The notes beneath the pieces were generated by a model that ran no database searches, had not been told where the DNA came from, and was given only the letters and a program-made list of their open reading frames with translations. A stretch of 64,000 nucleotides of DNA, taken from IMG/VR virus record IMGVR_UViG_3300022744_000020, positions 186,001 through 250,000 of that record; one strand, written 5' to 3'. The first letter of the stretch is position 1; each line of letters starts with the position of its first letter. Positions 39,144 through 54,375 of the stretch are shown here, piece after piece. The position numbers and the translations under genes are program-made.

Positions 39144-39174
39144 TCCGTGACCTGTGTTCGGTTTCATCTCGTCG

Positions 39175-39208: not shown

Positions 39209-39230
39209 GCCGTCTTCTATTAAAATTAAA

Positions 39231-39243
39231 CCCTATATCATCC
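39231..39243 (+). promoter_or_regulatory. Phage promoter-like motif
   Basis: CCCTATATCATCC, compare CCTATATCATC at 50847. Confidence 0.5.
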
Positions 39244-39275
39244 ATTTGCCAGTAACCCCCATGGGCTTTAGCGTA

Positions 39276-39758: not shown

Positions 39759-39761
39759 GCT

Positions 39762-40286
39762 TTGCGATCTTTGTTTCCACGAAAGACGATAGGTGATAAA
39801 TTGATACTGCAAAACGTCTCGTTGAGACTGGCTACTCGCCCGTCCGACAAACGTCGAGATAAAATCGATGGTCCGGTGAACGTGATCATTCGAATTCTCG
39901 ACCATCTGACCGAAACTCACCCTACTGACCATGGGGTGGATTATTGGTTCGAAGAAGAAAGGCTTTGGGCCTATCAAGATCCCAGCATTCAAGTCCATGA
40001 ATTCCGTTTCAACAATGTGGACTGGATGAAGCCTGGAAGCATCAATCGAGAGCAAGCGCAGTCGATTGCCAAGATCCTGATCGAAGCAAACAAGAACAAT
40101 CACAACGTGCTCGTTCACTGCGTGCAAGGAGAGTCGCGCAGTGCCGCCGTTGTCAAAGCAGCGCTCCAGTCGTTCAAAGACGCCACGTGCCCCACTGAAA
40201 TTCCGTGGTGCAACAACAGCGTTTGCGATGTGATCAAGTACGAGATTCTCCGGGCTAATCGCCGGGAAGATCGTGCACCTCAGTAG
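39762..40286 (+). CDS. Cys-dependent protein tyrosine/dual-specificity phosphatase-like protein
   Basis: VLVHCVQGESRSAAV (HCx5R) and an upstream D-containing loop FNNVDW; start uncertain. Confidence 0.8.
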   Translation: MRSLFPRKTIGDKLILQNVSLRLATRPSDKRRDKIDGPVNVIIRILDHLTETHPTDHGVDYWFEEERLWAYQDPSIQVHEFRFNNVDWMKPGSINREQAQSIAKILIEANKNNHNVLVHCVQGESRSAAVVKAALQSFKDATCPTEIPWCNNSVCDVIKYEILRANRREDRAPQ

Positions 40287-41178
40287 ACCCACGCTCGCCA
40301 AGAAGGCGATTTCCAACCCCTCAGCAAGAAAGGCTGAACTCGTGACCACCAAACAAAAATCCGTCAAAATCGGGAAGATACTAGGATGCGCCGTTATCGG
40401 CGGCGTCGCCTTGTATTTCGCCGTCAAAATTCTGATTGCCACCATGGCGATCGTGGCCGCTGGAGCGATCGGCTTCACGGCTGTGATGCTCTACCCGACG
40501 TTCCTGGAGCTGTTGGCTTACAACCAGCTCCAAGGAATGATTGCCATCTGGAAAGGCAATCCTGGTTTTGCCTTGCGGCGAAATCTCTTCGACATGAACG
40601 AGGATCACCAAAACCGATCCAAATCGACACTGCAACTCATCGGGGTTGGGCGCACCCTAGAAGATCGCCACGCCGAATCTTCCCGTCGATATCCGGACTC
40701 AGCAACCACCAGGTCTCTCCTGAGCCGAATCGACATGGTTCGTAAATCGGTTGATCATCAAAAGAAATTACTCGCCAATTCGGCTCAGGCTCTCGAGGCG
40801 TACGAGGCGCGGATTGAAGAGCTGGAATTTGATTGGGAGTCCGATCAGCAGATCAACAAGGCCGCGGGCATCTTGTCGGCGCTTACCGGACAAAGTCGCC
40901 GAGCCGCCATGCGTCAGGTGCGCGAAGACACGGCGCTCAAAGCGATCCGCAGCCAAGCAGCCGAAGCCATGGCGGCACTTGAGATGTCTCAACTCGAAGG
41001 AAACGCATTCACCCGCGAGGTCGAAGTCTCGGCTCGCGAGAGTCGGATGGCCGAAGATCAGCGACAGAAGGATCGCGACCGCACCATCGAAGCAGCGCCC
41101 CAACTGGAAAACGAATCCCGCCGTGGGCTGTTCGACAGCTTTCAGCAACAAGATTCTCGTCAAACCCAAAAGAAGTAA
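40273..41178 (+). CDS. Membrane-anchored coiled-coil protein (PspA/IM30-like architecture)
   Basis: Two N-terminal hydrophobic helices, then long heptad segments; start may be later. Confidence 0.6.
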   Translation: MHLSRPTLAKKAISNPSARKAELVTTKQKSVKIGKILGCAVIGGVALYFAVKILIATMAIVAAGAIGFTAVMLYPTFLELLAYNQLQGMIAIWKGNPGFALRRNLFDMNEDHQNRSKSTLQLIGVGRTLEDRHAESSRRYPDSATTRSLLSRIDMVRKSVDHQKKLLANSAQALEAYEARIEELEFDWESDQQINKAAGILSALTGQSRRAAMRQVREDTALKAIRSQAAEAMAALEMSQLEGNAFTREVEVSARESRMAEDQRQKDRDRTIEAAPQLENESRRGLFDSFQQQDSRQTQKK

Positions 41179-41187
41179 AGGTCCATC

Positions 41188-41349
41188 ATGCGCCTGCTTT
41201 TTGCTACTCTCGTTCTGGCAGCCTGCTTGGCCGTCGCCTACTTCCGTTCGGAAGGTACCCTGGGACTGCCCGAAATGAATATGCCCTCCAGTGGAGCACC
41301 AGCCCCCGCGCCCGCCACTCCGGCCGGCACTTCTTCCTTCAAGCTCTGA
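41188..41349 (+). CDS. 53-aa membrane/secreted peptide not in the ORF track
   Basis: MRLLFATLVLAACLAVAYFRSEG...PAPAPATPAGTSSFKL, fills the gap between two co-oriented genes. Confidence 0.7.
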   Translation: MRLLFATLVLAACLAVAYFRSEGTLGLPEMNMPSSGAPAPAPATPAGTSSFKL

Positions 41350-41365
41350 ACCAAGGACTTCTCAA

Positions 41366-42283
41366 ATGAAAAAGCTTTTCCTCGGCCTGATCGTGGCCCT
41401 GTTCTCCTTCCAGGTGTTCGCTCAGTCGAAGCCTCTGATCCTCATTGGAGGCTCGAACACCGAGTCTTCGATGTACTCGGCCATGGCCAGAGAGATCATC
41501 GGAACCTGTCGGGCTGAGGTGGCCGCCGCCTCTGGGTACACCCTCACTCAGGGGTTCAGCACCGGTACGGTGGACACCTTCGGCAAGATGCGAGCCAAAG
41601 CAGGCTGGGTGGCATTTGCCCAAGACGACATCCGCCAACTCTACATGAACAATGAGAAGGCTTCGATGGCCGGTTTCCTTCCGCTGATGGGGCTGAATCA
41701 TGAAGCTTATCATTTCATCGGTCCGGCTTCGGTTAAAGACGGATGGTTCGGTAAAAAGGCTCCCCAACTGGTGGAAGATCTGAGCGGCATGACCATCGCA
41801 GTTACCGAAACGGGAATGCTGAGCCTTCGTTGGTACATGCACTTGACGGGTATTGCGTTGAATCCGGTTCAGTTCGCTGATTCGGATGCGGCGATCGACG
41901 CCGTTAAAACCGGCAAAGCGGCTGCTGCATTGATCGTGACTTCTCGCGACAACCCGGCTATTGAACAGATGGGGAAGAAGACTGGCGGCTCGCTGAAGCT
42001 GCTGGGTCTGAGCAAGGCCCATGCTGACAAACTCAAGGCGGCGGGCTATCTGATCGAATCGTTGTCCTACCCGGGCTTGGGAATGGCGGTCACGGCGTGG
42101 ACCCGGGTGGTTCTGATGGCTCAGAACTTCAATGCACCTGATCGTCGGAGTGGTATTTCCGCTCTGCGCAAGTGCATTTCCGACAACCTGCCTGAGCTGA
42201 TCGACGAAGCAACCTTCACGTCGGCAGCATGGCGCGGGGTGGATCTGAAGGCCCCGATCAAGGCCGAAGAACTCTGGAAGTAA
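41366..42283 (+). CDS. TAXI-family-like periplasmic solute-binding protein
   Basis: Signal peptide VFA|Q; GG...MY; STGTVDT; AFAQDD; LNHEAYHFI; VEDLSGMTIAV. Confidence 0.7.
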   Translation: MKKLFLGLIVALFSFQVFAQSKPLILIGGSNTESSMYSAMAREIIGTCRAEVAAASGYTLTQGFSTGTVDTFGKMRAKAGWVAFAQDDIRQLYMNNEKASMAGFLPLMGLNHEAYHFIGPASVKDGWFGKKAPQLVEDLSGMTIAVTETGMLSLRWYMHLTGIALNPVQFADSDAAIDAVKTGKAAAALIVTSRDNPAIEQMGKKTGGSLKLLGLSKAHADKLKAAGYLIESLSYPGLGMAVTAWTRVVLMAQNFNAPDRRSGISALRKCISDNLPELIDEATFTSAAWRGVDLKAPIKAEELWK

Positions 42284-42302
42284 AACTCTTCTGGTTTGAA
42301 GC

Positions 42303-42337
42303 GGGCGGATGGTTTCGGCCATCCGCTCTTTCTTTTT
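42303..42337 (+). terminator. Rho-independent terminator
   Basis: GGGCGGATGGT-TTCG-GCCATCCGCTC plus T run. Confidence 0.85.
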
Positions 42338-42347
42338 AGTTTGGAGC

Positions 42348-42845
42348 ATGGAAATGAAACTCGATCAAATTGAACAAAACTTAAGCTGGTTCACTCAGAA
42401 CCTGACCGCTGGATTTGTTGTAAATCTCATTGCCTCAAATCCACAAAAGACTTTCCTTTTAGCAAACCAAATAAAAAGGGCTCTTGATCCAGAAGAAACT
42501 AAGTTGGATTTTCTGGATCAAGACGCTTTCAGCCAAGAGGTGTCCGGCTGGGACCAATATCACGAATGGGTTGGAAAGCGTCGGCAACAACTCGGTCAAG
42601 AAGGCAAAGTTTTGGTACTTTGTGGAGTTCCTTCTTGGGTTCGCACCGTAACCCAAGAAGACGTGCTCACTGATTCAGGTGACACTACTGAGAACCTCTG
42701 GGTGTTCCAAAAATTCACCCGATGGATACAGGAATTGGATTGCGTTATTTCTGAAAACCGAAATGGAGACTTATTGCTTCACAAACTCCGAGGGGTTGCA
42801 AATGCAACATTTAGTTTGCGTGACCCATTGATCATTTCAAGTTGA
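42348..42845 (+). CDS. Hypothetical protein (possible degenerate RecA/DnaB-like fold)
   Basis: GGAG RBS; IASNPQKT, KVLVLCG, LLLHKLRG. Confidence 0.6.
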   Translation: MEMKLDQIEQNLSWFTQNLTAGFVVNLIASNPQKTFLLANQIKRALDPEETKLDFLDQDAFSQEVSGWDQYHEWVGKRRQQLGQEGKVLVLCGVPSWVRTVTQEDVLTDSGDTTENLWVFQKFTRWIQELDCVISENRNGDLLLHKLRGVANATFSLRDPLIISS

Positions 42846-42863
42846 CGTCACTCGGAGGCTGAA

Positions 42864-43319
42864 ATGAGATGGACACAAGCTCAAAGAGACCGCGCTTTTA
42901 AAGCGCTCAAGAATATTCACGAGCCCAAATACCAATCCAAAGAAGCGATGGTGCTCCTGGAGAGCTTAAGGAGGCATTTGGAAGAAAAGCAGGCACAAAT
43001 GCGCTACCTCAGCATCAATCTTGGTGTCGAGGTGTTGCAGCAAGAGACAAATGAGTTTCTCAGAAATTGGTCTGATCATCCAGATCGTTGCCTAGACCCG
43101 TTTTTCAAAACGGTGGCAGTTACCTGCGATCTCCAAACTGCACCACGTACCCAAGATGGCCCTCTGCTACCAACGGGGGTCGTATTGCTCAATTACAACT
43201 TAGCTTTGAATGATCTTCTTTTGGGAAGAGCACCGGTCTGTCTTTTCCGTCCATCGACATTCTCAGATCACCCACTTCAGCAAATGTGGTTTGATCAATT
43301 TGGAACCCAAAACCCCTGA
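42864..43319 (+). CDS. Hypothetical protein
   Basis: GGAGG RBS. Confidence 0.7.
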   Translation: MRWTQAQRDRAFKALKNIHEPKYQSKEAMVLLESLRRHLEEKQAQMRYLSINLGVEVLQQETNEFLRNWSDHPDRCLDPFFKTVAVTCDLQTAPRTQDGPLLPTGVVLLNYNLALNDLLLGRAPVCLFRPSTFSDHPLQQMWFDQFGTQNP

Positions 43320-43328
43320 GGAAAGAAA

Positions 43329-44015
43329 ATGGAACACACTGAAACTCAACCGAATAACACAGCTACCTTTGATCAATTCTTGACCGGTTGGCTTAGGCAG
43401 ATACCAAACATGCCAGGGGATGAATCGAGCGCACTAAGAGTTCTTGAAATCATCAGCAACCAGCAAGATAAGATGGCCTTGATGGCTTCCAATCGAGTCA
43501 ACGAAGCTCTGAATCTGCTTATCAGTACGACACATCACCAAGCTGTTCGACTCAGGAGCGAGGTTAAGTTTGTTCAAGGTCCTGAGCATTTGTCGAAAGA
43601 CGTGTCACTGATCCACGAGTTTGTTTCTGACTATCCTCGTGGCGGAATCCCCATCAAAAATAATAAAATCCGTGACACCGTCACGGATACGATTTTTTGG
43701 GCAATCATTGACAGTGTGGCGAGGCTCGACTACATTGGATCGAAAGAAGGGTTTCGTATTTTGTTCACCCCGGCAATCCTGACAAGCGTCTGGGATGAGG
43801 AGGATAACTTAGGACCTTGCCAAAAACAGAAGATCACCTTTGAATTGAGGTACACGTTTGATTACCCTGGATTAGTGAACCTTCACGACACCACACAGCT
43901 CAAGGAAAGATGCGATATTCTTTCGGCCAATGGTTTCTTTGAAAGTATCTTGAAGAAGGGGTTTCACGGCATTGTCCTGCAGCGCTTCGCTTCCAAGTAC
44001 CGAAACATCATTTAA
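43329..44015 (+). CDS. Hypothetical protein
   Basis: ORF in operon. Confidence 0.75.
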   Translation: MEHTETQPNNTATFDQFLTGWLRQIPNMPGDESSALRVLEIISNQQDKMALMASNRVNEALNLLISTTHHQAVRLRSEVKFVQGPEHLSKDVSLIHEFVSDYPRGGIPIKNNKIRDTVTDTIFWAIIDSVARLDYIGSKEGFRILFTPAILTSVWDEEDNLGPCQKQKITFELRYTFDYPGLVNLHDTTQLKERCDILSANGFFESILKKGFHGIVLQRFASKYRNII

Positions 44016-44035
44016 TCTACCAATACCCAGCCACC

Positions 44036-44629
44036 ATGAACGACGATTACTGCAACACCTGCCCCACCAATTCCAAGGGCAGCATCACGAACTGTTTGGC
44101 CACCACCTGCTCTCAACGCGATCTGATGGTTGAGGAGAATTGGCTTCTTGGCCGACTGATCACCGAACATCATCGGATTGTTGCCACTATTAAAAGGGGC
44201 AACCAGATTGTCGAAGAGAATCGTCTTCGCCGTGAGGCTTACACCAAAACCCCCGTGGTCTGGTCTGGCCTGACACTCACTCAGGAGGTCATTGATGATG
44301 CTGAGCGGCTGATCAAATCTCGACTGATGGAGAGTGTTCTGAAGCTTCTGCAAAGCCATGGCGCCACGCCTGCTCAAGCGCAACAGATCTACGATGAACG
44401 CAAGCTTGCGACGGATCTTCCGATTCCCGACAGCTACACGTTCAGCAACGGGTTCATTCTCGGCAAGATGAAAACCCGTGAGCTTTTCGCTCGGATCAAC
44501 GAGCGCCGGATCATGATGGCTGTGAAGTTGGCAATGGACAGCTTCAATGAAAACCATCCCAACATGGACACTGCCGGGTTGCTCAGGATTTTCCACGACG
44601 ACATCAAGAAAACCACGGATCAACTCTGA
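44036..44629 (+). CDS. Hypothetical protein with Cys-rich N-terminus
   Basis: CNTC...NC...TC. Confidence 0.75.
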   Translation: MNDDYCNTCPTNSKGSITNCLATTCSQRDLMVEENWLLGRLITEHHRIVATIKRGNQIVEENRLRREAYTKTPVVWSGLTLTQEVIDDAERLIKSRLMESVLKLLQSHGATPAQAQQIYDERKLATDLPIPDSYTFSNGFILGKMKTRELFARINERRIMMAVKLAMDSFNENHPNMDTAGLLRIFHDDIKKTTDQL

Positions 44630-45141
44630 TGAAACATCTGATCATCACCTACCTGCCGTACGTGCTCAGCACCATCACCATCTACCAGGTGTTTTTGGCA
44701 GGAAACAAAAACGTTCACGCGTGGATCATTGGGATGGGTAACCAGGTGCTCTGGTTGACTTGGATTCTTGTCAGCCAGAATTATGGTCTTCTCCCGATGA
44801 ACGTCGCGATGTGGGTCCTGTACACCCGCAACCATTTCAAATGGAGGAAAGAGGCTTCAAACCTCAAGAAGAAATCCCAACCGATAATCCACCCCACTCG
44901 CGAATTGGCTGTTTATCCTTGCGGTCTGCATTCGATTTCTTTCCTCACTTATCACGCGAGAACCGACCACTCTCCGGTGGTGGAGTGTCGCTTAGTGAGT
45001 GAGGATGATTTTCGCGGATGCGGGAAAGTCAAGTTCTCTACCGAAGAAGTTTCTTTCGACGATATGAGGCAAGCCTACGATTTGGCTCAGGTTGACCTTC
45101 AACAAACCATCTCTAAATATTGCGGACCTCAAAAATGCTGA
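44629..45141 (+). CDS. Half-size PnuC-like membrane domain fused to a soluble domain
   Basis: Three TM helices with AWIIGMGNQVLW and LYTRNHFKW. Confidence 0.55.
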   Translation: MKHLIITYLPYVLSTITIYQVFLAGNKNVHAWIIGMGNQVLWLTWILVSQNYGLLPMNVAMWVLYTRNHFKWRKEASNLKKKSQPIIHPTRELAVYPCGLHSISFLTYHARTDHSPVVECRLVSEDDFRGCGKVKFSTEEVSFDDMRQAYDLAQVDLQQTISKYCGPQKC

Positions 45142-45356
45142 CTGCAGAAACAACCGTGATCGTTCTTCGTGACCCGAAACTTAAGAACGAACTGGTCCCC
45201 TTCACGTTTCATAGTGAGCAGGGGTTTGAGCCGAATGCGTCGCTTAATCGGTTAGTCAGTCTGGGACTGCTCTCCCTGACGACGAAGAATGGAAGGTACC
45301 AGTTTTATAGAATCACTCCGGAAGGTCGTGAACTTTGTTTAGCCATTGGGTATTGA
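45135..45356 (+). CDS. Small winged-helix-like protein
   Basis: SLNRLVSLGLL...YRITPEGRE. Confidence 0.6.
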   Translation: MLTAETTVIVLRDPKLKNELVPFTFHSEQGFEPNASLNRLVSLGLLSLTTKNGRYQFYRITPEGRELCLAIGY

Positions 45357-45359
45357 ATT

Positions 45360-45683
45360 ATGAAAATTGCAGATAAACTCCGATTGCTTAATGTAAACCC
45401 AGAGACCTTAGAGGGGTGGAGTCCGAGCATTTTGTTACGGATTCTGCTCAACTCCGAAGAACTCAATGACCTTGAGGTGGAGGTTTTGCGGCTTCACGCT
45501 CCTAAAAAAGATAATCCGGATATTCTTCCAAAAAGGGTGATGATGAGTACCCAACAATTTCAAACCGCAAAAGGTCTTTACGAAAAAGGATTGTTATCGA
45601 AAACGACTCGAATGACCTATATTCTCAGCATCATGGGAACCTGGGTCTTGTCTATCATTCCTGAAGATTGTGATCGCAGCTAA
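45360..45683 (+). CDS. Small winged-helix-like protein
   Basis: AKGLYEKGLLSKTTRMTYILSIMG. Confidence 0.5.
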   Translation: MKIADKLRLLNVNPETLEGWSPSILLRILLNSEELNDLEVEVLRLHAPKKDNPDILPKRVMMSTQQFQTAKGLYEKGLLSKTTRMTYILSIMGTWVLSIIPEDCDRS

Positions 45684-45685
45684 AC

Positions 45686-45700
45686 AAAGCGATACATCAT
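45686..45700 (+). promoter_or_regulatory. Phage promoter-like motif
   Basis: AAAGCGATACATCAT, identical to 23007. Confidence 0.65.
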
Positions 45701-45729
45701 CCAACCGCCACAACCAACAAGGCACTGAC

Positions 45730-48700
45730 ATGAAGCTCTCCACCTACCTCAAGAACTACGCTCCATCCCTGAAGATTGTGTTTTTCAAAGACTCCCCCTC
45801 TTGGGAAGACGAGTCCGCTGAAACAAAACTCACTTTTCAGAATTTGGGCCTTTTAAACCCTCAAGACGGGATCAAAATGGATGACTTCCTGAAAAAGAAT
45901 CAGTGTTGGGGTCTGTTTTTCAGCATGCAAGGGCGTCCGCGAGATACAGACGCCAGCACGATTCTGGGGGCTTTCCAATTCGGTCAGAATCCGGAGATCC
46001 TGCGCCGCTTGCCGAACGAGTGTTTGCTTTTCTGCGATGTTGAAATCACTCAGGAAGATCTCGACATCTTTGATGAGACACTGAAGCAGTCGGGAACCAA
46101 CATCGAGAACAACTGGTTTTCCACGAGGATCAAAGATCCGATGTTCGTGGATTGCCCGGAGCCACCAACCACCTGCGTGCTTCCCTCGGCTCCGGACGAG
46201 ATGATGTTGGCGGCATACATGCTGCGCTCTGCCGCTCGTCTCGGCGTGAAGCTTCTGAGAAGTGAGTCGGACCCGGACAGTATTCTGGTATTCCGTCCCA
46301 ATAGCTGTCCGGTCGATCCGATACATGTGCTGTTGAAAGCATGCGAGCTGAATTTCGACAAGAAAGAAGACCTCATTTTGTCACAGTTCGAGCTCACAAC
46401 GGGGAAGAGATTGACCCGTAACGAACTGGATCAATCTCCGATCTATTGTTTCACCGACGTCTCAATCACCGACGAGGACCTGATCGATGCTCGAAGGAAA
46501 ATGCCACAACTCTTGGCAGAAGATCGTCCGATCCTGGATTGGTTCATGGAAACTGTGAGCGGTGAGGTTGCCAAACCAGAAACCGTGAACAGTACCCCCG
46601 CCCCGGCTCCTCTTCTGAAAGATCTCATAATCGAAACCCATAAGAAAATCATAAAAGAGATCCTTCCCGCACCAACCGAAACTCGGGAAAAGGCTCTTGA
46701 TGAGGCACTGAAGAAAATGCATGAACGCGTCTTTGAAAAGGCCAGTCTTGCAAATGCATCGGAATGCATCCAAGGCCAAATCCCGTCGAAACAATCCGCG
46801 GAAGAAAACCCCATGAAAACTACGAAGCTCAGCGAATACATGGCCTTTGAAATCGGCCGCCTTGGTGGGATTGTCCTCCCGTCCGGGATCCACATGTACC
46901 CGTTTGTGGTCATGCTGCCGATGAGTATTCCGGTCATCGATGATCCGATCTGGTCCTGGCTCAATATGCCGATGGCTGGGTTTTGCAATCGGACTGCGTT
47001 CGGCAAGATATTTCAGGCGTTCCGAAGCCTCCCAGTAGGTCGATCCATCCTCCCTCCGTTTGGGAATTCTCCGCGATACGTCTTCGAGGAGGTGCTGATC
47101 ACCAAGCAAGATCTGGACATCGCTCAGGACGACACTCAGAAAATCGCACAGCGATATGGTCGTTACATGCGGCAATACTTCGTCCAGAAACCCAACACAT
47201 ATGCAGCAGCCCCAATGACGAATCCGTTCTTGTGCCAGCCCTCTGGCTTCATCCCGAGAAGTCCCTTTTCTCCTGAAAGCATTGCCCTCCCTCATTCTGA
47301 ATGGGAAGATTGTCGTCGTAGGATCAACCCCCAACCAGAACCCAGCATGTATCTCTCCGAGTATCTTGGAAAGACCCTCCACACCGTGAACGCGCCGTTT
47401 AATGTGTTGGGGTTCCCGAGCAATGGGCGCGATGCTGGACTGATTGTGAAATCGACAACAGCCATGCTAACGGCCAGCAGCGGTGTCGATCAGCAATGGA
47501 GGAACATAGTAACCAATGGCGCCTCTTGGGGCGAGAGGAACGTCAAGATCTTCGAAGCATTTCAAGTTCAGGCGTATGAGGGGCAGTTTGATTCCCTCCA
47601 TACGCGATACGCTGGGCCTTCCTCCAACATCTTTCTGGCTTTCCGTGATATCAAGATCACTCAGGCGGACATCGAACTCGCTCGTCAAGCGATGCGGCAG
47701 TTCACGGGGGTTCAAGCTACTCACCCGTGGCTTGGACTGGATCTTCCACTCAGTCCGACTTCTCAATTTACTGGAGTCTCCGAACCCATGAAAACCAACC
47801 CTTTCCCGCGCATGGGGATGTATGAAACAAAAATCCACACCCTGGGCTCGTACCTTCGTCGGTCGCTGGAGCGCTCGACGTCCCAATTGTCCGTCATCCA
47901 GCTTCGTCAACTGGGTACCGCGGCAATTGTCCAGCATGGTGCCCTGAGTGGAGAAAACGCGTATCTGTGGCCAGCCTGGATGGGGGTAATTACTCTTTCA
48001 GACGCATCGTCACTGTACTGTAATCCTATTTTCCGGGCTTTCTTACACGTTATCCCTGATACCAGCCGCAACTGGATGCGCATGAGTGGTAATCATGATC
48101 TGGTCTTGGGGTATTTTCACGATTACGTGATCACTCAGAAAGACCTCGAGCATGCGCGACAATACATGACCCTGGATGGGAAGCCTCATCCGTGGTTAAA
48201 AATGGACCTCGAAGAACTCGAACCCGCGAAGCTCGGACTCTACCAGTATCTCCGTCGCGAGGTGGAAAACTGCAACAATCGGTTCCGTGTTGTCCTGCGC
48301 ACCAATCAGGATCAGTCAGTTGGAGTGATCTGCTACGACTATGACAAGGAAGACGATGGGGATGGATCGGCTTACAACTGGGCCATCGCTGTTTACAACT
48401 ACCGGCAGCAAAATCGCCATGATTCCGTCATCTTCAACATGTTCCTGAACGGACTGAGAACGAAAGACTTCTACAACGAACGCCCGAAGAGTCGCGCTGA
48501 TTTCATCTTCCTCAACGCCGACATCAGCCAGTTGGACATTGACAAAGCACGTCAGGTTTATCAAGAGGTGACCAAAATGACTCAGGTACATCCCTGGCTT
48601 ATTTCGGACCTCGTCAAGGGCGTGGTTTTCACCGGACAGCCGATTGCGCCGTCACAAGCTGGTTATGTTCCCATCCCGCCAACGCAGCCGGGACCGCAGT

Positions 48701-49068
48701 TCGTGACGGAAAGTGGCTGGAAGCCGATCCCAATCCCGGAATGGGCGCGGACCATCCGAGAAGAAGCCATGGATCAAGCATTTCCTCATCGTCGGGATCA
48801 GTCCAATTTGGCAGAGGCGGCAAAGGTCCAAGCTATCTTTGGTCTGGTTGAAAACCTGAGTCATGGCGCACGATGCGTGCTGAGGACCCTGAAAGAAGTC
48901 GGGGCCACTGCTGCTAGTTCGATCATTGAGACCCATGGACTGAAGGCTTTGGAGGAAGCCAGGTTTGTTCTGCGATTCCGCAGCCAAGGAGAAAGTCACG
49001 TGTCGATCAATAAAGACGGTGTGATAGCACTGAAGATGCTGAAGGTCCTCTTTCCGAATGAGGGATAA
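45730..49068 (+). CDS. 1112-aa protein with six divergent tandem domains and a C-terminal winged-helix-like domain
   Basis: Six L[SAGY]xY[LM] ... F.D..IT..D[LI]..A units. Confidence 0.85.
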   Translation: MKLSTYLKNYAPSLKIVFFKDSPSWEDESAETKLTFQNLGLLNPQDGIKMDDFLKKNQCWGLFFSMQGRPRDTDASTILGAFQFGQNPEILRRLPNECLLFCDVEITQEDLDIFDETLKQSGTNIENNWFSTRIKDPMFVDCPEPPTTCVLPSAPDEMMLAAYMLRSAARLGVKLLRSESDPDSILVFRPNSCPVDPIHVLLKACELNFDKKEDLILSQFELTTGKRLTRNELDQSPIYCFTDVSITDEDLIDARRKMPQLLAEDRPILDWFMETVSGEVAKPETVNSTPAPAPLLKDLIIETHKKIIKEILPAPTETREKALDEALKKMHERVFEKASLANASECIQGQIPSKQSAEENPMKTTKLSEYMAFEIGRLGGIVLPSGIHMYPFVVMLPMSIPVIDDPIWSWLNMPMAGFCNRTAFGKIFQAFRSLPVGRSILPPFGNSPRYVFEEVLITKQDLDIAQDDTQKIAQRYGRYMRQYFVQKPNTYAAAPMTNPFLCQPSGFIPRSPFSPESIALPHSEWEDCRRRINPQPEPSMYLSEYLGKTLHTVNAPFNVLGFPSNGRDAGLIVKSTTAMLTASSGVDQQWRNIVTNGASWGERNVKIFEAFQVQAYEGQFDSLHTRYAGPSSNIFLAFRDIKITQADIELARQAMRQFTGVQATHPWLGLDLPLSPTSQFTGVSEPMKTNPFPRMGMYETKIHTLGSYLRRSLERSTSQLSVIQLRQLGTAAIVQHGALSGENAYLWPAWMGVITLSDASSLYCNPIFRAFLHVIPDTSRNWMRMSGNHDLVLGYFHDYVITQKDLEHARQYMTLDGKPHPWLKMDLEELEPAKLGLYQYLRREVENCNNRFRVVLRTNQDQSVGVICYDYDKEDDGDGSAYNWAIAVYNYRQQNRHDSVIFNMFLNGLRTKDFYNERPKSRADFIFLNADISQLDIDKARQVYQEVTKMTQVHPWLISDLVKGVVFTGQPIAPSQAGYVPIPPTQPGPQFVTESGWKPIPIPEWARTIREEAMDQAFPHRRDQSNLAEAAKVQAIFGLVENLSHGARCVLRTLKEVGATAASSIIETHGLKALEEARFVLRFRSQGESHVSINKDGVIALKMLKVLFPNEG

Positions 49069-49084
49069 AATCCCCTGATGGAAT

Positions 49085-49135
49085 GCTACTACCCTGGACG
49101 CCAAAAGCGTCCAGGGTAGTAGCTCCTTCTTTTTT
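49085..49135 (+). terminator. Long terminator hairpin, CAAAA loop
   Basis: GCTACTACCCTGGACGC-CAAAA-GCGTCCAGGGTAGTAGC plus T-rich tail. Confidence 0.85.
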
Positions 49136-49189
49136 ATATCGTTCCGGCATTTTGTACAAATCCACCACACCGATCGCTGGAGCTTACCC

Positions 49190-49975
49190 ATGATTTCCTT
49201 GCAACTCGCTTCAAAGAAAGAAGCTTTTGATTTCTTCCCTGGCTTTGAAGACATCTGGCCCTCCAAATGGAGCGAGCAAGCCATGGTCGCTACAACCGAC
49301 TGGACTCTTGATGAAGCCGATGGAGAGATTTTCTACATTCTTAACGACGGCAAGAAGATTGGAATTACTGGCTGGTGGCCGTTATCCGAATCAATGGCCG
49401 GGCTTCGCTGGCATGGCGTCATCCCTGAATGCCGAGGTCATGGATTTGGAAAGCAAGCGCTTATTTACCTTACCAATCGTCTTGCTTCAAACTACAAAAA
49501 ATTGATCGAAGTCACCATGAGTGATGCACCGATCAAGTTCTTTCGTTCTTTCGGATTCGAAGAAATTACGGACCCGATCTTGATTGAATTTACCAAGAAA
49601 TTGGTAGGGGATTACGGACATCGTTTTTTGGAATTTCGATTGGAGGAGAAGCGGATCTCGTACAAAGACTACGACTATCCGTGGGATTGTGTCAGCGTGT
49701 TTAAGCTGACCACAGAACATTGGGGCCCCTCTTATCGGCTGGATCAATACTGGCGTGGGTTGGGTCCTGGCCAGAATCTTTTTGTGGAAGTTTCATATTT
49801 CAAACTAGGAACTGAGAATAACGACCACAAGGTTTTGGTTCGTGGTGGGGACGCCGGTGGAATGGAGCGTACGTTCCCAGGACGGGCGGCAGCAAAAGAG
49901 TTCTTTGATAAAATTGTGGAGTTGCCAAGGGTTAACGGAGCAGAACTCAAAGCCCTAGGCTTCACCTACATTTAA
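49190..49975 (+). CDS. GNAT acetyltransferase fused to an unknown C-terminal domain
   Basis: WHGVIPECRGHGFGK motif A; FFRSFGF motif B. Confidence 0.8.
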   Translation: MISLQLASKKEAFDFFPGFEDIWPSKWSEQAMVATTDWTLDEADGEIFYILNDGKKIGITGWWPLSESMAGLRWHGVIPECRGHGFGKQALIYLTNRLASNYKKLIEVTMSDAPIKFFRSFGFEEITDPILIEFTKKLVGDYGHRFLEFRLEEKRISYKDYDYPWDCVSVFKLTTEHWGPSYRLDQYWRGLGPGQNLFVEVSYFKLGTENNDHKVLVRGGDAGGMERTFPGRAAAKEFFDKIVELPRVNGAELKALGFTYI

Positions 49976-50006
49976 GATGGTGTAGTCACATTCCAAAAAT
50001 TCATGG

Positions 50007-50072
50007 TCATATATACTCTCATTGAATCGCAAAGCAATTTCGCATAACGATTCACCCTCCTGAGAAAAAGGA
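50007..50072 (+). promoter_or_regulatory. Promoter-like motif, 5' hairpin and RBS hairpin TCCT-GAGAAAA-AGGA
   Basis: TCATATATACTCTCATTGAATC; GAATCG/CGATTC stem; RBS hairpin at 50058-50072. Confidence 0.65.
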
Positions 50073-50078
50073 ACTTTT

Positions 50079-50360
50079 ATGACCATCGTCGTTACCACCT
50101 CCGCACACGCTCTTCAGTTCATGACCGACCTCCGGGTCGGTGTGATTGGGTATGCCAAGGCGACCATCTCGGAGGCAATGGAGGAGCTGGCAGAAGCTGC
50201 TCAAATGGGTAATCGAGTTGTTCTCTTCAACGTCGGGGAGGACTCCCTGGTGGAAGGAATCCCCTTCGTCATTGAAACGGATGCTGAGAAGATCAGCGGC
50301 GTCCGACAGGTGTTCATTCGTCCCCAGTCTCTGGCAGATGTTTGGATGATCCTGGAGTAA
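50079..50360 (+). CDS. Hypothetical protein
   Basis: Monocistronic between promoter motif and terminator. Confidence 0.75.
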   Translation: MTIVVTTSAHALQFMTDLRVGVIGYAKATISEAMEELAEAAQMGNRVVLFNVGEDSLVEGIPFVIETDAEKISGVRQVFIRPQSLADVWMILE

Positions 50361-50369
50361 TCTCTGGGT

Positions 50370-50400
50370 GGATGGGGCTTCGGCCCCTCCTTAATTTTTT
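50370..50400 (+). terminator. Terminator
   Basis: GGATGGGGC-TTCG-GCCCCTCC followed by T-rich sequence. Confidence 0.8.
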
Positions 50401-50417
50401 CTTGGAAGGAAGATCAA

Positions 50418-50843
50418 ATGCACGACGGAAGTATTCCTAGCTGGAAAAATTTCGGCACAGATAGCGTTCAGCGCCGTCCCTCAAAACCAACCCAGCCCGA
50501 TCCACTTTACCCCTTTTGCGAGCCGGTGGAAATGGTCATGACTGAGAACGGACCAAGACAGGCTGAAACGGATTTAATGAAATTCAAGCGCACCGGTAAC
50601 GCCCTCTGCGCGGCAAAGCTTTTGTCCGATCAAATACTTCAGGACCTGAAAAAGCCGGAGATCAAAATTCGTCGAGATTATCTCGAATGGCTTCTGGCCT
50701 ATTTAGAGGTTGATTGGGACTCGATCATGGAAAGTAACAACCGAGCTACTCGGAATGTGAATGATTTAATGGAGCGAGCCCAAGAAAACAAAGAAAACCA
50801 AAAGCTCGTGGTGGCCAGACTCGCAACCATTAGAAAAGATTAA
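50418..50843 (+). CDS. Hypothetical protein
   Basis: ORF with RBS. Confidence 0.7.
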   Translation: MHDGSIPSWKNFGTDSVQRRPSKPTQPDPLYPFCEPVEMVMTENGPRQAETDLMKFKRTGNALCAAKLLSDQILQDLKKPEIKIRRDYLEWLLAYLEVDWDSIMESNNRATRNVNDLMERAQENKENQKLVVARLATIRKD

Positions 50844-50846
50844 GAT

Positions 50847-50882
50847 CCTATATCATCGATCTGGATAATCCAAATCCAGATC
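50847..50882 (+). promoter_or_regulatory. Promoter-like motif plus 5' hairpin
   Basis: CCTATATCATC, then GATCTGGAT/ATCCAGATC. Confidence 0.55.
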
Positions 50883-50901
50883 AACCAAACCAACCGCCAT
50901 C

Positions 50902-51774
50902 ATGACCATTCCTACCGTCTACTCCCAAGCCCGCCCGCAGATCTTTACCGAGGAGGAAATCGCACAGATGACTCCCGTCAATCAACTCGCTTACGCGCGA
51001 CTGAAAAGACTCAATCCGGAGGAGGAAGCAGGCTTCTTCCGCTGGAGCGCCGGCTCGTTGGCCTTTGATTCCGATGTGGAGAACCATCCCTGCTGGGGCC
51101 ACATCTACGCCAATCGGATCCGTGAATTATTGGTGGGGCTCAAAGATGAGAATCTCTACGTTGAGGTGTTTGACATGGGGGAGTTCTGGGTCTACAACCT
51201 TCAGCTCAACAACCCTCAGCAATGGAAGATTCTCAATCAGGGGGTCTACCACTTTCAGACGGAATACCAGCAAAGTTTTGGCCATGTGTCGTCGGACGCA
51301 GATACCATGACGGTGATGTACAAATCCCGACCCATGGGCCCGGTTCCGGATCACAGCATCGATGCCTGGTGGATCTCGGACAGCTTGTTGACCCGCATGG
51401 TCGACTACTGGTCGGCCAAGAAGTATTTCCAGCGGCTGGAAACTCAGCAGCACCGATACGAAGTAGCCCCCATTACCCGGCTCATTTTGGAGTCGAGCAA
51501 CGGAGAAAAGAAACTGGTGGACATTTCCGGGCTTGTCGGCATGTTCCATTACGGGGACGAGGGTTCTGTGAGGCTGGCCTTTCGGTATTTGGACAACCAG
51601 AGAGACACTGGCTTGGAGGTGGGTACCAAGGAAGCCGCTGATCGTTACCAGAAGTTCATTTTGGACGAGTTGGCTGCTCAGGGGGTTCCCGTTCTGAACA
51701 ACAAGGCACCGGATCTGAAGGCGTTCTATCCCGCTCAAAACTACCGTCGATCTGCCCCGCTAATCCTCAGATAA
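50902..51774 (+). CDS. Hypothetical protein
   Basis: 290-aa ORF; C-terminus weakly resembles family A. Confidence 0.8.
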   Translation: MTIPTVYSQARPQIFTEEEIAQMTPVNQLAYARLKRLNPEEEAGFFRWSAGSLAFDSDVENHPCWGHIYANRIRELLVGLKDENLYVEVFDMGEFWVYNLQLNNPQQWKILNQGVYHFQTEYQQSFGHVSSDADTMTVMYKSRPMGPVPDHSIDAWWISDSLLTRMVDYWSAKKYFQRLETQQHRYEVAPITRLILESSNGEKKLVDISGLVGMFHYGDEGSVRLAFRYLDNQRDTGLEVGTKEAADRYQKFILDELAAQGVPVLNNKAPDLKAFYPAQNYRRSAPLILR

Positions 51775-51805
51775 GCCTCAAAAACTGAAGCTTTAAGACA
51801 GCTCA

Positions 51806-51850
51806 ATACTGCCCCTTCCTCAAAAAGGAAGGGGCAGTATGCTTTTCTTT
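51806..51850 (+). terminator. Long terminator hairpin, CAAAA loop
   Basis: ATACTGCCCCTTCCT-CAAAA-AGGAAGGGGCAGTAT plus T-rich tail. Confidence 0.85.
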
Positions 51851-51904
51851 TTCTTTTATTCTCTGCCGGCAAGTAAATTCTCAAACTTAACCAGGAGTGC
51901 ATCC

Positions 51905-52495
51905 ATGCAACCCCTTAAGCAATTGATTTTATTGCTGTGTTTTCTGTTCAGCACCAATGCGTTCAGTCACACACCGCAGTGGATAACTCACCAAACTAAA
52001 GGCCGAGTAAGTCAATCTCTGGCTGTAAAAATTGTCTCTTTTGTGCATGCCTACTCACTCAAGCGGGATCTAGATCCTGACTTGGTGTTTCGGTTCATCA
52101 CGGTGGAGTCAGGGTTTCGATACAATGCATTATCCAAAGCCAACGCTCGTGGATATATGCAAGTAGTACCACAGTACCACCCTGAAAAAATAAGAGGTCG
52201 CAACCTCTTTGATCTCGAAACCAACATTGAAGTTGGGACGGCAGTGTTTCAAGAATATCTACTCAAGTATGGTGACGTTGATAAAGCCATTCGCGCTTAT
52301 CAAGGAAATCATCGCAGTGATGTCTACTTGAACAAAATTCGAGCAGTCAAGTTTATTGACTATCCGAATTACTACCCCAACACATCCCTCATTCCTGTCG
52401 AGTCGAATGCTGTAGATTTTAATGAACCTACATCATCAATTTGCGACGAGTTAGATCACTACGCTTGCATGCCTGACGAATTGCGTCGGCCATAA
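51905..52495 (+). CDS. Secreted SLT-domain lytic transglycosylase
   Basis: Signal peptide; ITVESGF (catalytic Glu), ARGYMQV, AIRAYQG. Confidence 0.88.
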   Translation: MQPLKQLILLLCFLFSTNAFSHTPQWITHQTKGRVSQSLAVKIVSFVHAYSLKRDLDPDLVFRFITVESGFRYNALSKANARGYMQVVPQYHPEKIRGRNLFDLETNIEVGTAVFQEYLLKYGDVDKAIRAYQGNHRSDVYLNKIRAVKFIDYPNYYPNTSLIPVESNAVDFNEPTSSICDELDHYACMPDELRRP

Positions 52496-52563
52496 GCTTT
52501 TGATCTCTGCTCTGACGCAAATGTAAAACTCTTCATGCGCTAAGCGCAGAAAGAAATAGCCCC

Positions 52564-53103
52564 GTGATCAAATCACTCAAATGGGTCTTGATGACCCTGA
52601 TTTTAAGTCTTTCGATTCCCTGCTTCCCGATGTCGGTGCAGTGGATTCAGTATGCGTCGTCAAACCGCATCGATCCCATCCGGGCAGTTTACCTCAAAGA
52701 CATGATTGCCAGGATCGCCAAAGAGAAAGGCGTGCCGGTAAAGCTGGCGCATCAACTGATCTCTACCGAATCTGCATACATTGCCCGAGCCAAGCACGGC
52801 CCAGCAGTAGGAATGACCCAGGTCATTCCTAGGTTCCATCAAGATCGATTCTTGACTGGAAACTATTACAACGAGGAAAACAACGTCCGAGCCGGGTTGG
52901 ATTATTTGGCAGAGTGTTTGGAAGATGCTCACGGTAATCAGGCGGTCGCTCTGGCTCTGTACAACCGAGGACCGCATCGATACGCATACGCCAGCAAAGT
53001 CCTTCGGGTGAACTTCAAGATACCAGCTTCATTCCATCGCTCTCAAGCAAAGAAACAATTGTATGCGAGCCGCGACGTGAGTCGACCACGGAGCAAGGGA
53101 TAA
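52564..53103 (+). CDS. Second secreted SLT-domain lytic transglycosylase
   Basis: Signal peptide; ISTESAY, AVGMTQV, ALALYNRG. Confidence 0.85.
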   Translation: MIKSLKWVLMTLILSLSIPCFPMSVQWIQYASSNRIDPIRAVYLKDMIARIAKEKGVPVKLAHQLISTESAYIARAKHGPAVGMTQVIPRFHQDRFLTGNYYNEENNVRAGLDYLAECLEDAHGNQAVALALYNRGPHRYAYASKVLRVNFKIPASFHRSQAKKQLYASRDVSRPRSKG

Positions 53104-53149
53104 CTCCGATCATCTTGCTCTGACCGCTTGGTATCTCAACCTTGCTAAA

Positions 53150-53460
53150 TCAGTGTACTCTTCTGTTATCGAGAGTAATCGTGACGGGTGAAGACTGGGC
53201 TCGCCGGCCCCTCAAGTCGTGTCCTGTAACCCATGATCTGCTTTGAAATGAGTAGCACGGCAATTGTTCGGGATAGCCCCACCCAAGCCCAAACGCCATC
53301 GAGGTGAATGGACTAAGATAAGTAAACTCAGTGGGGCTCTTACGGTTGTATGCACGCACGCGACAACTCGTGAATTTACAGAGTGCGCAAATAAGAAATT
53401 ATTTGTTTTGCACATCTGTTGCGTGAAGACGTCGAGTGATGTTCTTCTAGGGTGCACGTT
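53150..53460 (+). ncRNA. Candidate ~310-nt structured ncRNA
   Basis: Intergenic; helices TACTCTT/GAGAGTA, GACT/AGTC around GGGC/GCCC, AGCCCCAC/GTGGGGCT, nested ACTCG/CGAGT, ACAGA/TCTGT, CAAATAA-GAAA-TTATTTG. Confidence 0.45.
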
Positions 53461-53473
53461 TTGGAGGCGGATC

Positions 53474-53698
53474 ATGGAAAGATTCGAGGTATGGATTTCA
53501 ACATTCTGGGGAATGGGGCAGATCCAGCGTTCTCGACGGGTGTACGTCTGTCAGGCTAAGACTTTTGACGAGGCGTGCTCAAAATTTGTCGAAAGATACC
53601 CCGAGTACCGAGAAGGTTGGAAGCCAGAGTCGCGACAAATTGGCTGGGATCAAAAGCTTTTCCCTTCCAAGAAAGAAGCAGACGCGTACTTGAGATAA
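53474..53698 (+). CDS. Small hypothetical protein (74 aa)
   Basis: GGAGG RBS before MERFEVW. Confidence 0.7.
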   Translation: MERFEVWISTFWGMGQIQRSRRVYVCQAKTFDEACSKFVERYPEYREGWKPESRQIGWDQKLFPSKKEADAYLR

Positions 53699-53708
53699 GG
53701 GATTTTCA

Positions 53709-53796
53709 GGGTCCTGTCCCAACACCGGCCTTCTAAGCCGGCGACATAAAACGGTTGGACGGAAGTCAAGAAGTTCGATTCTTCCAGGACCCCCCA
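53709..53796 (+). tRNA. Atypical tRNA-like RNA, Arg(UCU) anticodon arm, no D arm
   Basis: GGGTCCTG/CAGGACCC acceptor, CCGGC-CTTCTAA-GCCGG, GAAG-TTCGATT-CTTC T arm, 3' C-CCA. Confidence 0.7.
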
Positions 53797-53805
53797 AGTC
53801 ACCTG

Positions 53806-53862
53806 TCATACATTCACTCCAGAGTCCAAAAGACTCTGGAGTGAATGTATGATGCTTTTTTT
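53806..53862 (+). terminator. Long terminator hairpin, CAAAA loop
   Basis: 21-bp perfect stem TCATACATTCACTCCAGAGTC/GACTCTGGAGTGAATGTATGA plus T run. Confidence 0.88.
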
Positions 53863-53907
53863 ATGCCGATCTAAAATAGGGTACAACCTCCTTGGAGAAA
53901 TAGAAGC

Positions 53908-54375
53908 ATGCCTGATAACCACACTCAGCTCTGGACCAGTATTCGCCCCGGTCAAAAATGGCATTTCACTTTGCTGGCGATCGTTCCGAACCATTGGCTA
54001 TCGAAATCGGGCCCGAGCATAAAGGAGAGAATTCAGCAGAATCCAGAATGCCTGAAAGAGATCCAGCGATTCACTGAAGACGGAAAAACTCTCTTTCATG
54101 GCGGTACCATGTTTGAGCTTAAAGCCACACATGGAGTTCCGCTCGATTTTCTGTTGGATAAAATTGTCAACGAGTTTGGCTTTGCTGTCAGTTGGATCGA
54201 TTTCATTGAACAGTCGCGCAAGAATGGGAGATGGGATTTCCAGACCATCAAAGAGATTGATTACGGCCTCAAGGACGCAATGATCGATCGACAGTACGCC
54301 GAAGGAATTCTGATCCGATGTAAGATCTACATGACACAAGTCGCTCACCCGCTTTTGAAGGAACAAACCAAATGA
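53908..54375 (+). CDS. Protein with an alanyl-tRNA-synthetase-like helical motif
   Basis: GGTMFELKATHGVPLDF...EFGFAVSWIDF resembles AlaRS G..AFKLYDTYGFPLD...E.G..VD..GF. Confidence 0.55.
   Translation: MPDNHTQLWTSIRPGQKWHFTLLAIVPNHWLSKSGPSIKERIQQNPECLKEIQRFTEDGKTLFHGGTMFELKATHGVPLDFLLDKIVNEFGFAVSWIDFIEQSRKNGRWDFQTIKEIDYGLKDAMIDRQYAEGILIRCKIYMTQVAHPLLKEQTK

What the first reader, a model, noticed from the sequence alone, without database searches (positions are those of the whole stretch)
45730..49068. 1112-aa protein built from six divergent copies of an unrecognised ~120-aa domain plus a winged helix
Seen in sequence: units begin KLSTYL (45730), MLAAYM (46201), KLSEYM (about 46825), YLSEYL (47350), TLGSYL (about 47838) and LGLYQYL (about 48232). 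They end FCDVEITQEDL, FTDVSITDEDL, FEEVLITKQDL, FRDIKITQADI, FHDYVITQKDL and FLNADISQLDI, the last three followed by HPWL. Pro-rich linkers separate the units, and most have a central IF.AF motif. 62456-63055 may hold a solo copy. The gene has its own promoter motif and terminator. Inference: a multivalent scaffold or decoy array in which each copy binds a different target variant, tethered to DNA.
Basis: partly seen in the sequence, partly recalled or inferred. Interest (0 to 1): 0.62.

Follow-up and report, generated by a model that had tools for sequence, protein, structure and literature searches.

The report
Six-repeat orphan protein, jumbo phage
A giant nucleus-forming phage from a freshwater metagenome encodes a 1112-residue protein made of six very divergent copies of a ~125-residue domain that matches no known family or solved fold; the repeats are real but the function is still a guess.

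Summary
The ORF (45730-49068, +) and its six repeats are real. Each unit is recovered by an HMM built from the other five (E 6e-4 to 9e-9). The end motif F-x-[DEN]-x-x-I-[TS]-x-x-D-[LI] occurs six times against 0.0006 expected, and nowhere else in the 270-kb genome.

The genome is a divergent Chimalliviridae (phiKZ-like) jumbo phage. The domain is an orphan: no Pfam, PHROG, NCBIfam or PADLOC match and no tblastn match in 50,697 phage records. A unit profile run against 1.84 billion representative proteins found only a fragment from a ~95%-identical wastewater phage. There the gene stays open (dN/dS about 0.27).

The invariant positions are five hydrophobic or aromatic residues, a Tyr and a helix-capping Asp. 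I therefore favour a non-catalytic array of binding modules on Pro-rich tethers (confidence 0.3).

The terminator is confirmed. The gene is the last in a probable eight-gene operon.

The parts
45730..49068 (+). Gene for the 1112-aa repeat protein (P0001). The ATG at 45730 is the preferred start. The GTG at 45670 would add 20 aa and overlap the upstream ORF.
   Evidence: An AAGG lies 8 nt upstream of the ATG. In the ~95%-identical wastewater relative, similarity begins at 45702 and the sequence upstream differs, which argues against the GTG start. dN/dS is 0.27 over the last 506 codons.
45730..46119 (+). Unit 1 (residues 1-130): KLSTYL ... ILGAF ... FCDVEITQEDL ... WF
   Evidence: Leave-one-out HMM E 3.1e-4.
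46198..46545 (+). Unit 2 (residues 157-272): MLAAYM ... ILSQF ... FTDVSITDEDL ... WF
   Evidence: Leave-one-out HMM E 4.2e-4.
46546..46818 (+). Long second linker (residues 273-363). It has a Pro/Thr-rich start and then predicted helices at about 293-340. This was the only stretch above pLDDT 50 in the single-sequence model.
46819..47181 (+). Unit 3 (residues 364-484): KLSEYM ... IFQAF ... FEEVLITKQDL ... YF
   Evidence: Leave-one-out HMM E 1.4e-4.
47347..47733 (+). Unit 4 (residues 540-668): YLSEYL ... IFEAF ... FRDIKITQADI ... HPWL
   Evidence: Leave-one-out HMM E 8.7e-9.
47833..48198 (+). Unit 5 (residues 702-823): TLGSYL ... IFRAF ... FHDYVITQKDL ... HPWL
   Evidence: Leave-one-out HMM E 5.8e-4.
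48229..48600 (+). Unit 6 (residues 834-957): LGLYQYL ... IFNMF ... FLNADISQLDI ... HPWL. This is the unit that was folded.
   Evidence: Leave-one-out HMM E 1.5e-5. AlphaFold2 model with an 8-row alignment: pLDDT 85.9, pTM 0.82, order helix-strand-strand-helix-helix-strand-helix.
48601..48756 (+). Pro-rich last linker (residues 958-1009, 19% Pro). The relative carries an in-frame 9-nt insertion after 48607.
48757..49065 (+). C-terminal non-repeat domain (residues 1010-1112). Predicted helical at low confidence. Its identity as a winged helix is unproven.
49085..49133 (+). Intrinsic terminator: 17-bp stem, 5-nt loop, T-rich tail.
42309..45683 (+). Seven co-directional upstream ORFs, probably co-transcribed with the gene. 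They lie between the strong terminators at 42303-42328 and 49085-49123. They include a 78-aa ORF (45120-45356) with a sub-threshold winged-helix match and a 107-aa ORF (45360-45683) that is replaced or diverged in the relative.

Best explanation
The gene encodes a non-catalytic, multivalent binding or scaffold protein of a divergent nucleus-forming (Chimalliviridae) jumbo phage.

Shown:
- Six ancient, strongly diverged duplicates of one compact ~125-residue alpha/beta domain are strung on flexible linkers of 7-95 residues, mostly Pro-rich.
- They are followed by a distinct ~100-residue C-terminal domain.
- The gene is a lineage-restricted accessory gene under purifying selection.
- It is the last gene of a probable eight-gene operon of orphan genes.

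Inferred:
- Only fold-maintaining positions are conserved between units: a hydrophobic core, a T/S-x-x-D helix-capping box and a terminal aromatic pair.
- Each unit therefore presents a different surface and binds a different partner or site.
- The C-terminal domain anchors the array to DNA or to a phage or host structure.
- The protein then gathers or sequesters several macromolecules in the infected cell.
For: - The repeats are real and collinear.
- The invariant columns are L, Y, I, F, F, I and D only. The Ser/Thr sits one residue before the last helix of the model and the Asp three residues later, which is a capping box (and the sequence itself).
- Linkers are 14-21% Pro.
- The unit model is confident: pLDDT 85.9, pTM 0.82.
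- No enzyme family matches in Pfam, PHROGs, NCBIfam or PADLOC.
- The ORF is kept intact in a ~95%-identical relative, with an in-frame indel only and dN/dS 0.27.
- The genome is a chimallivirus: chimallin, RNAP beta and phiKZ gp68/gp69 homologues lie in synteny with PhiPA3, and the helicase is ~40% identical to PhiPA3's.
- The neighbours are orphan accessory genes.
Against: - No partner, localisation or expression timing is known.
- Conservation of only core residues is also what neutral drift under a fold constraint would give in a purely structural protein.
- The C-terminal anchor role is a guess.
- The fold rests on one AlphaFold2 model from an 8-row alignment of paralogues.
- That model disagrees with the single-sequence model on whether residues 880-893 are helix or strand.
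Confidence: 0.3

Rival explanations
1. It is a structural or packaged virion protein, such as an inner-body, ejected or decoration protein. The repeats serve as spacers or building blocks, and the C-terminal domain docks onto the capsid, tail or DNA.
For: - phiKZ-like phages carry many large, lineage-specific virion and inner-body proteins that form paralogue families (my own knowledge of the phiKZ and 201phi2-1 proteome studies, not tested here).
- A beads-on-a-string array with a terminal anchor is also the plan of decoration proteins such as T4 Hoc (own knowledge).
- Two lytic transglycosylase genes lie 2.8 kb downstream.
Against: - No similarity to any protein of any sequenced phage, including all phiKZ-like virion proteins.
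- The immediate operon holds small orphan genes, a winged-helix-like ORF and, just downstream, a GNAT, rather than morphogenesis genes.
- The [SAG]-x-E sites, the kind cut by the phiKZ prohead protease (own knowledge), number 12 and are not concentrated in the linkers.
Confidence: 0.2
2. It is a polyprotein. The Pro-rich linkers are cut by a phage or host protease, releasing six different single-domain proteins and a C-terminal protein.
For: - Long unstructured linkers lie between compact domains.
- Processing of multidomain phage proteins is a known theme in polyvalent proteins (PMC5512222 abstract).
Against: - No peptidase domain in the protein or its operon.
- No shared sequence motif among the linkers.
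- The fifth linker is only 7 residues long.
Confidence: 0.1
3. The units are degenerate protein-kinase-like N-lobe modules, a kind of pseudokinase half-domain. They bind nucleotides or kinase-interacting partners.
For: - More than 40 of the 50 best rows among 48,161 representative PDB chains are protein-kinase-like N-lobes: Mps1, PknE, Bud32, APH(9), LanKC kinase domains. About 70-100 residues align at 3.4-4.0 A.
- ESM Atlas rows for kinase families reach TM 0.48-0.49.
Against: - Foldseek finds nothing at E of 0.001 or better.
- No invariant Lys, Glu or Gly-rich loop.
- No C-lobe, HRD or DFG motifs. The unit profile hits no kinase among 1.84 billion proteins.
Confidence: 0.08
4. It is an artefact: a chimeric assembly or a non-coding open frame.
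For: The window comes from a metagenome contig.
Against: - Independent wastewater assemblies from another study carry the same gene at ~95% identity. Their contigs bridge several units (45702-47158 and 47546-49073) and carry no frameshift.
- dN/dS is 0.27.
- The repeat structure exists only in this reading frame.
Confidence: 0.01

Closest known systems
Protein-kinase-like N-lobe (structural resemblance only)
   Different: The scores are below the noise guide. There is no Gly-rich loop, VAIK Lys, alphaC Glu or C-lobe. There is no sequence relationship.
Tandem arrays of divergent immunity or antagonist domains (SUKH superfamily arrays; herpesviral US22/TRS1 with two tandem SUKH domains; PMC3113570)
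   Same: Several strongly diverged paralogous copies of one small alpha/beta binding domain are kept side by side in a conflict-prone genome. That paper interprets such arrays as binding different targets.
   Different: No SMI1_KNR4/SUKH or other Imm family match. Here the copies are fused in one polypeptide rather than sitting in adjacent genes. No toxin gene lies next to them.
Polyvalent proteins of phages and conjugative elements (PMC5512222)
   Same: It is a very large multidomain protein of a phage, in a lineage-specific accessory region. It may carry a nucleic-acid-binding or anchoring end domain.
   Different: Polyvalent proteins are defined by combining domains with disparate activities. 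This protein repeats one domain six times and has none of their known domains.
Winged-helix regulators of the MarR, PadR and EarA type (C-terminal domain only)
   Same: The sequence pattern in residues 1049-1107 can be read as helix-helix-helix-hairpin. Language-model neighbours include HTH_27, MarR_2 and HTH_45 clusters.
   Different: Those neighbours score 0.78-0.84, at the level reached by shuffled proteins. There is no HMM or PDB-sequence match. The low-confidence model shows only helices.

Membership tests
Protein-kinase-like superfamily | Significant structural match of the whole catalytic domain (N-lobe plus C-lobe) | tested here: not met
Protein-kinase-like superfamily | Gly-rich loop, beta3 Lys, alphaC Glu, and HRD and DFG motifs (or recognisable remnants of them) | tested here: not met
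   The invariant columns of the six units are L, Y, I, F, F, I and D only. No Pkinase, APH or Kdo Pfam match even at E of 10 or better.
SUKH / SMI1_KNR4 and other Imm immunity domains | Profile match to the family HMMs | tested here: not met
   Pfam scans of the whole protein and of single units found nothing relevant.
SUKH / SMI1_KNR4 and other Imm immunity domains | Genomic linkage to a toxin gene | tested here: not met
   The neighbours are orphans, a GNAT and transglycosylases. No nuclease or toxin family was seen.
Polyvalent proteins (Iyer et al. 2017) | Several domains of disparate biochemical activity in one polypeptide | tested here: not met
   There are six copies of one domain plus one unassigned domain, and none of the catalogued domains (definition).
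Winged helix-turn-helix DNA-binding domains | HMM or structural match of the C-terminal domain to a winged-helix family | tested here: inconclusive
   No HMM, PDB-sequence or word-search match. Feature-space neighbours are at noise level.
Type III secretion class I chaperone fold (CesT, Spa15) | Structural match to the alpha-beta3-alpha-beta2-alpha fold | tested here: not met
   Foldseek E 0.39-0.8 and TM 0.15-0.21. Absent from the VIA-align lists.
Chimalliviridae (identity of the genome, not of the protein) | Chimallin (nuclear shell protein) and multisubunit RNAP genes in phiKZ-like synteny | tested here: met
   tblastn of PhiPA3 proteins against the genome: chimallin E 3e-9, RNAP beta E 1e-65, gp68/gp69 homologues E 1e-25 and 2e-18, DNA polymerase E 1e-129, all collinear at 98-113 kb. 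No PhuZ was found by Pfam Tubulin_2.

The most novel reading that the evidence does not exclude
The unit is a genuinely new protein fold family that so far exists only in one lineage of nucleus-forming jumbo phages. The six-unit array is a multi-target sponge or adaptor: each diverged surface captures a different host defence or takeover target, or a different cargo for the phage nucleus, and the C-terminal domain fixes the array to DNA or to the nuclear shell.
Probability: 0.12. Interest if true: 0.75.

Novelty: new variant of a known kind. Interest (0 to 1): 0.45.

Why it matters
The architecture is familiar: diverged paralogous modules on flexible tethers, as in immunity-domain arrays and large phage accessory proteins. 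The module itself has no relative in 1.84 billion representative proteins and no convincing match among solved or predicted structures.

If the units prove to be independent binding modules, this would be a compact natural example of one phage protein addressing several targets at once in a nucleus-forming phage. In such phages, where a protein acts (cytoplasm, shell or nucleus) is a central question. It would also add a new domain family, and possibly a new fold, to phage protein space.

If it is only a structural spacer protein, it is one more jumbo-phage ORFan.

Tried and rejected
- Self-BLAST of the whole protein gave no off-diagonal hits. Repeats this divergent needed unit-wise Smith-Waterman with shuffles and HMMs.
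- Megablast and tblastn of the gene and protein against 50,697 phage records: no match.
- Word-index protein search, whole length: none. C-terminal domain alone: none.
- Unit profile against 1.84 billion representatives: only P0002, a fragment from the near-identical relative. P0003 and P0004 are repeat-inflated chance hits; hhalign probability is 1.4% for P0004.
- IMG/VR scan: none. The metagenome scan returned only the source contig itself.
- The 90% cluster holds only P0001 and P0002.
- The unit profile against PDB sequences gave only a chance hit, E 0.04 to Nat1.
- The ESM-Atlas feature search for U6 gave noise-level scores of 0.80.
- The whole-protein single-sequence AlphaFold2 model is unusable, pLDDT 33.6.
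- A shared winged-helix domain between the C-terminus and the two small upstream ORFs: E 0.04-1.1 and an unconvincing alignment, so dropped.
- DNA-mimic decoy: rejected because the units are not acidic.
- DNA-level tandem repeats: none.
- A de-novo search for a shared intergenic promoter word found only T-runs.
The HMM sweep with filters off had already found none.
Full report
THE GENE

The window is bases 186001-250000 of a single 270,383-bp virus record. That record is JGI metagenome contig Ga0228700_1000008, from a freshwater metagenome. On the + strand one frame is open from 45670 (GTG) or 45730 (ATG) to the stop at 49066-49068.

I take the ATG at 45730 as the start, giving 1112 aa (P0001), for two reasons. 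An AAGG lies 8 nt upstream. In a ~95%-identical relative from wastewater metagenomes, similarity begins at 45702 and the sequence upstream is different.

THE REPEATS ARE REAL

- The pattern F-x-[DEN]-x-x-I-[TS]-x-x-D-[LI] occurs six times, at residues 101, 241, 452, 638, 796 and 927. Shuffles of the protein give 0.00055 on average. No other ORF of 50 aa or more in the genome has it.
- Unit-against-unit Smith-Waterman scores reach z = 13.5 (U4-U6), 9.5 (U2-U3) and 8.6 (U4-U5). Ten of the 15 pairs are matched by at most 3 of 200 shuffles. U6 against U1-U3 is not significant on its own.
- In leave-one-out tests, an HMM of five units always ranks the sixth first among about 1,400 genome ORFs plus 1,000 shuffles, with E from 5.8e-4 to 8.7e-9.
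- The six units align collinearly. The seven invariant columns are L and Y in the first helix, I and F in the central I-F-x-A-F motif, and F, I and D in the end motif.
- 'HPWL' is the local form of an aromatic pair (WF, WF, YF, WL, WL, WL) that follows the I-T/S by 20-26 residues in all six units.
- The units are therefore residues 1-130, 157-272, 364-484, 540-668, 702-823 and 834-957.
- The linkers are 26, 91, 55, 33, 10 and 52 residues by these bounds. They are 14-21% Pro, except the long second one at 8% (measured on bounds a few residues different). The second linker contains predicted helices.
- There is no DNA-level repeat, so the duplications are old.
- U4-U6 form one subgroup. U1-U3 are more loosely related to one another.

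SUB-CLAIMS THAT FAIL OR STAY OPEN

- ORF 62456-63055 is not a solo copy. The unit HMM gives it -0.2 bits, and with filters off nothing in the genome scores better than E 0.085.
- No sigma-70-like promoter lies directly upstream. The nearest site, at 45092-45121, is upstream of the two small preceding ORFs, and such sites are no more frequent than in shuffles.
- Strong + strand terminators lie at 42303-42328 and 49085-49123, with none of comparable strength between genes in that interval. The gene is therefore most simply the last of eight co-directional ORFs (42309-49068). The terminator right after the gene is confirmed: 17-bp stem and T-run.
- The C-terminal 'winged helix' could not be verified. 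Pfam finds nothing even at E of 10 or better, PDB sequences nothing and the word search nothing. Language-model neighbours include winged-helix clusters, but at scores of 0.78-0.84 that shuffled sequences also reach.

THE GENE IS FUNCTIONAL

Contigs from wastewater runs of a different study cover the whole gene at about 95% identity. Pieces bridge several units. The changes are mostly transitions, there is one in-frame 9-nt insertion after 48607, and there are no frameshifts. For the last 506 codons, compared with contig L001, dN = 0.026 and dS = 0.097, so dN/dS is 0.27. This excludes an assembly chimera or a spurious frame.

GENOMIC SETTING

- The window's SNF2/DarB-like helicase is about 40% identical to those of PhiPA3, phiKZ-like and related jumbo phages.
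- PhiPA3's nuclear shell protein (chimallin), RNAP beta subunits, the phiKZ gp68 and gp69 homologues and the DNA polymerase all find collinear homologues at 98-113 kb of this genome.
- The phage is therefore a divergent member of the nucleus-forming Chimalliviridae. A PhuZ-type tubulin was not detected with Pfam Tubulin_2.
- Genes around the finding are almost all orphans.
- Upstream lie a small membrane-type protein (phrog_2421, with a weak NMN-transporter match), a 78-aa ORF with a sub-threshold winged-helix match (EarA E 7.7e-4, below the cut-off), and a 107-aa ORF.
- Downstream lie a GNAT acetyltransferase and two lytic transglycosylases.
- This is an accessory region, not a conserved morphogenesis or replication block.

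THE DOMAIN IS AN ORPHAN

- There is no match in Pfam, PHROGs, NCBIfam or PADLOC.
- tblastn of the protein against all phage records found nothing.
- The six-unit profile, scored by HMMER against 1.84 billion cluster representatives, found one real hit. It is P0002, a 429-aa fragment of the near-identical wastewater relative on a 1,559-bp contig.
- The two other hits (E 3e-5 and 7e-4) are internally repetitive proteins whose partial matches add up. hhalign gives 1.4% probability for P0004.
- IMG/VR and JGI metagenome scans found only the source contig.

FOLD

- The whole protein folded without an alignment is useless: pLDDT 33.6.
- Unit 6 was folded with the other units and the relative's two units as an 8-row alignment. 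This gives pLDDT 85.9 and pTM 0.82, with all five models at 80 or above.
- The model has helix 6-17, strands 21-27 and 32-39, helices 49-62 and 69-77, strand 90-97 and helix 103-117.
- The conserved Ser/Thr sits immediately before the last helix and the conserved Asp three residues later. This is the classical S/T-x-x-D/E capping box (established knowledge). The end motif is therefore structural, not catalytic.
- One caveat: the single-sequence model made residues 883-890 a strand, whereas the alignment-based model makes them a helix.
- Foldseek finds nothing at E of 0.001 or better in the PDB or BFVD.
- The ESM-Atlas shape search peaks at TM 0.49.
- The lists are, however, dominated by one superfamily, the protein-kinase-like N-lobes, extending through alphaD and alphaE.
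- I treat this as the nearest known arrangement, not as membership. The units lack every kinase signature and have no C-lobe.

MECHANISM

Shown:
- Six fold-equivalent, sequence-diverged modules on flexible tethers, plus a different C-terminal domain.
- No invariant residue of catalytic type.
- Purifying selection.
- Accessory status in a chimallivirus.

Inferred, confidence about 0.3: a non-catalytic multivalent binder or scaffold. Its units present different surfaces and its C-terminal domain anchors the array. The units are not acidic, which argues against DNA mimicry.

Rivals:
- A structural or packaged virion protein (0.2).
- A polyprotein cut in the linkers (0.1).
- Degenerate kinase-N-lobe-like nucleotide or partner binders (0.08).
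- An artefact (0.01).

COMPARISON WITH KNOWN SYSTEMS

- The plan resembles tandem arrays of diverged immunity or antagonist domains (SUKH arrays; two tandem SUKH domains in herpesviral proteins; PMC3113570). It also resembles large phage accessory 'polyvalent' proteins (PMC5512222).
- It fails the defining tests of both. There is no SUKH or Imm profile match and no linked toxin. It has one repeated domain rather than disparate activities.
- I therefore file it as a new variant of a known architectural kind, built from a domain family that is itself new.

LIMITS

- No host, expression timing, localisation or partner is known.
- The fold rests on one model.
- The C-terminal domain is uncharacterised.
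No non-standard genetic code was used.

Noticed in passing
window 45380-45701 (ORF 45360-45683, 107 aa): In the ~95%-identical wastewater relative, both flanks match but this ~320-bp stretch is replaced or more than 20% diverged. The contigs show loose ends at 45379 and 45702. This is a hypervariable small gene directly upstream of the repeat gene. One other sample (X5) does carry window-like sequence here.
   Followed up: partly
window 48358-48420 (residues 877-897 of unit 6): Six of the ten amino-acid differences in unit 6 between the window and the relative fall within 21 residues, spaced roughly every 3-5 positions. In the model this segment is the loop and second helix. It could be a fast-evolving surface patch, but the numbers are small.
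   Followed up: partly
window 45120-45356 and 45360-45683: The two small ORFs just upstream align weakly with each other (E 0.04) around an L..GLLS.TT motif. The first has sub-threshold winged-helix matches: EarA E 7.7e-4 and HTH_27 E 0.04.
   Followed up: partly
window 743-1747, 1789-4107, 63059-63643: Nucleotide-metabolism genes: thymidylate synthase (Pfam E 6e-91), ribonucleotide reductase large subunit (PHROG E 2e-195) and dihydrofolate reductase (Pfam E 3e-34).
   Followed up: yes
window 51839-52495 and 52564-53103: Two adjacent lytic-transglycosylase genes. The first has a hydrophobic N-terminus.
   Followed up: partly
window 18721-21831 (- strand) and 11065-12897 (+): Two further large orphan ORFs (1036 aa and 610 aa). 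The 1036-aa ORF has no Pfam or PHROG match. The 610-aa ORF has no PHROG match and no tblastn match in any phage record (it was not scanned against Pfam).
   Followed up: partly
genome C1:102578-103573 (outside the window): A chimallin (nuclear shell protein) homologue, only 24% identical to PhiPA3 gp53, lies next to an RNAP beta homologue. No PhuZ tubulin was detected with Pfam Tubulin_2. This marks a deep-branching chimallivirus.
   Followed up: partly
window 35000-54000: Intrinsic-terminator-like hairpins are about twice as frequent as in shuffles (46 against 21.8). Very long perfect stems on the + strand at 42303, 49085, 51806 and 53807 appear to delimit operons.
   Followed up: partly
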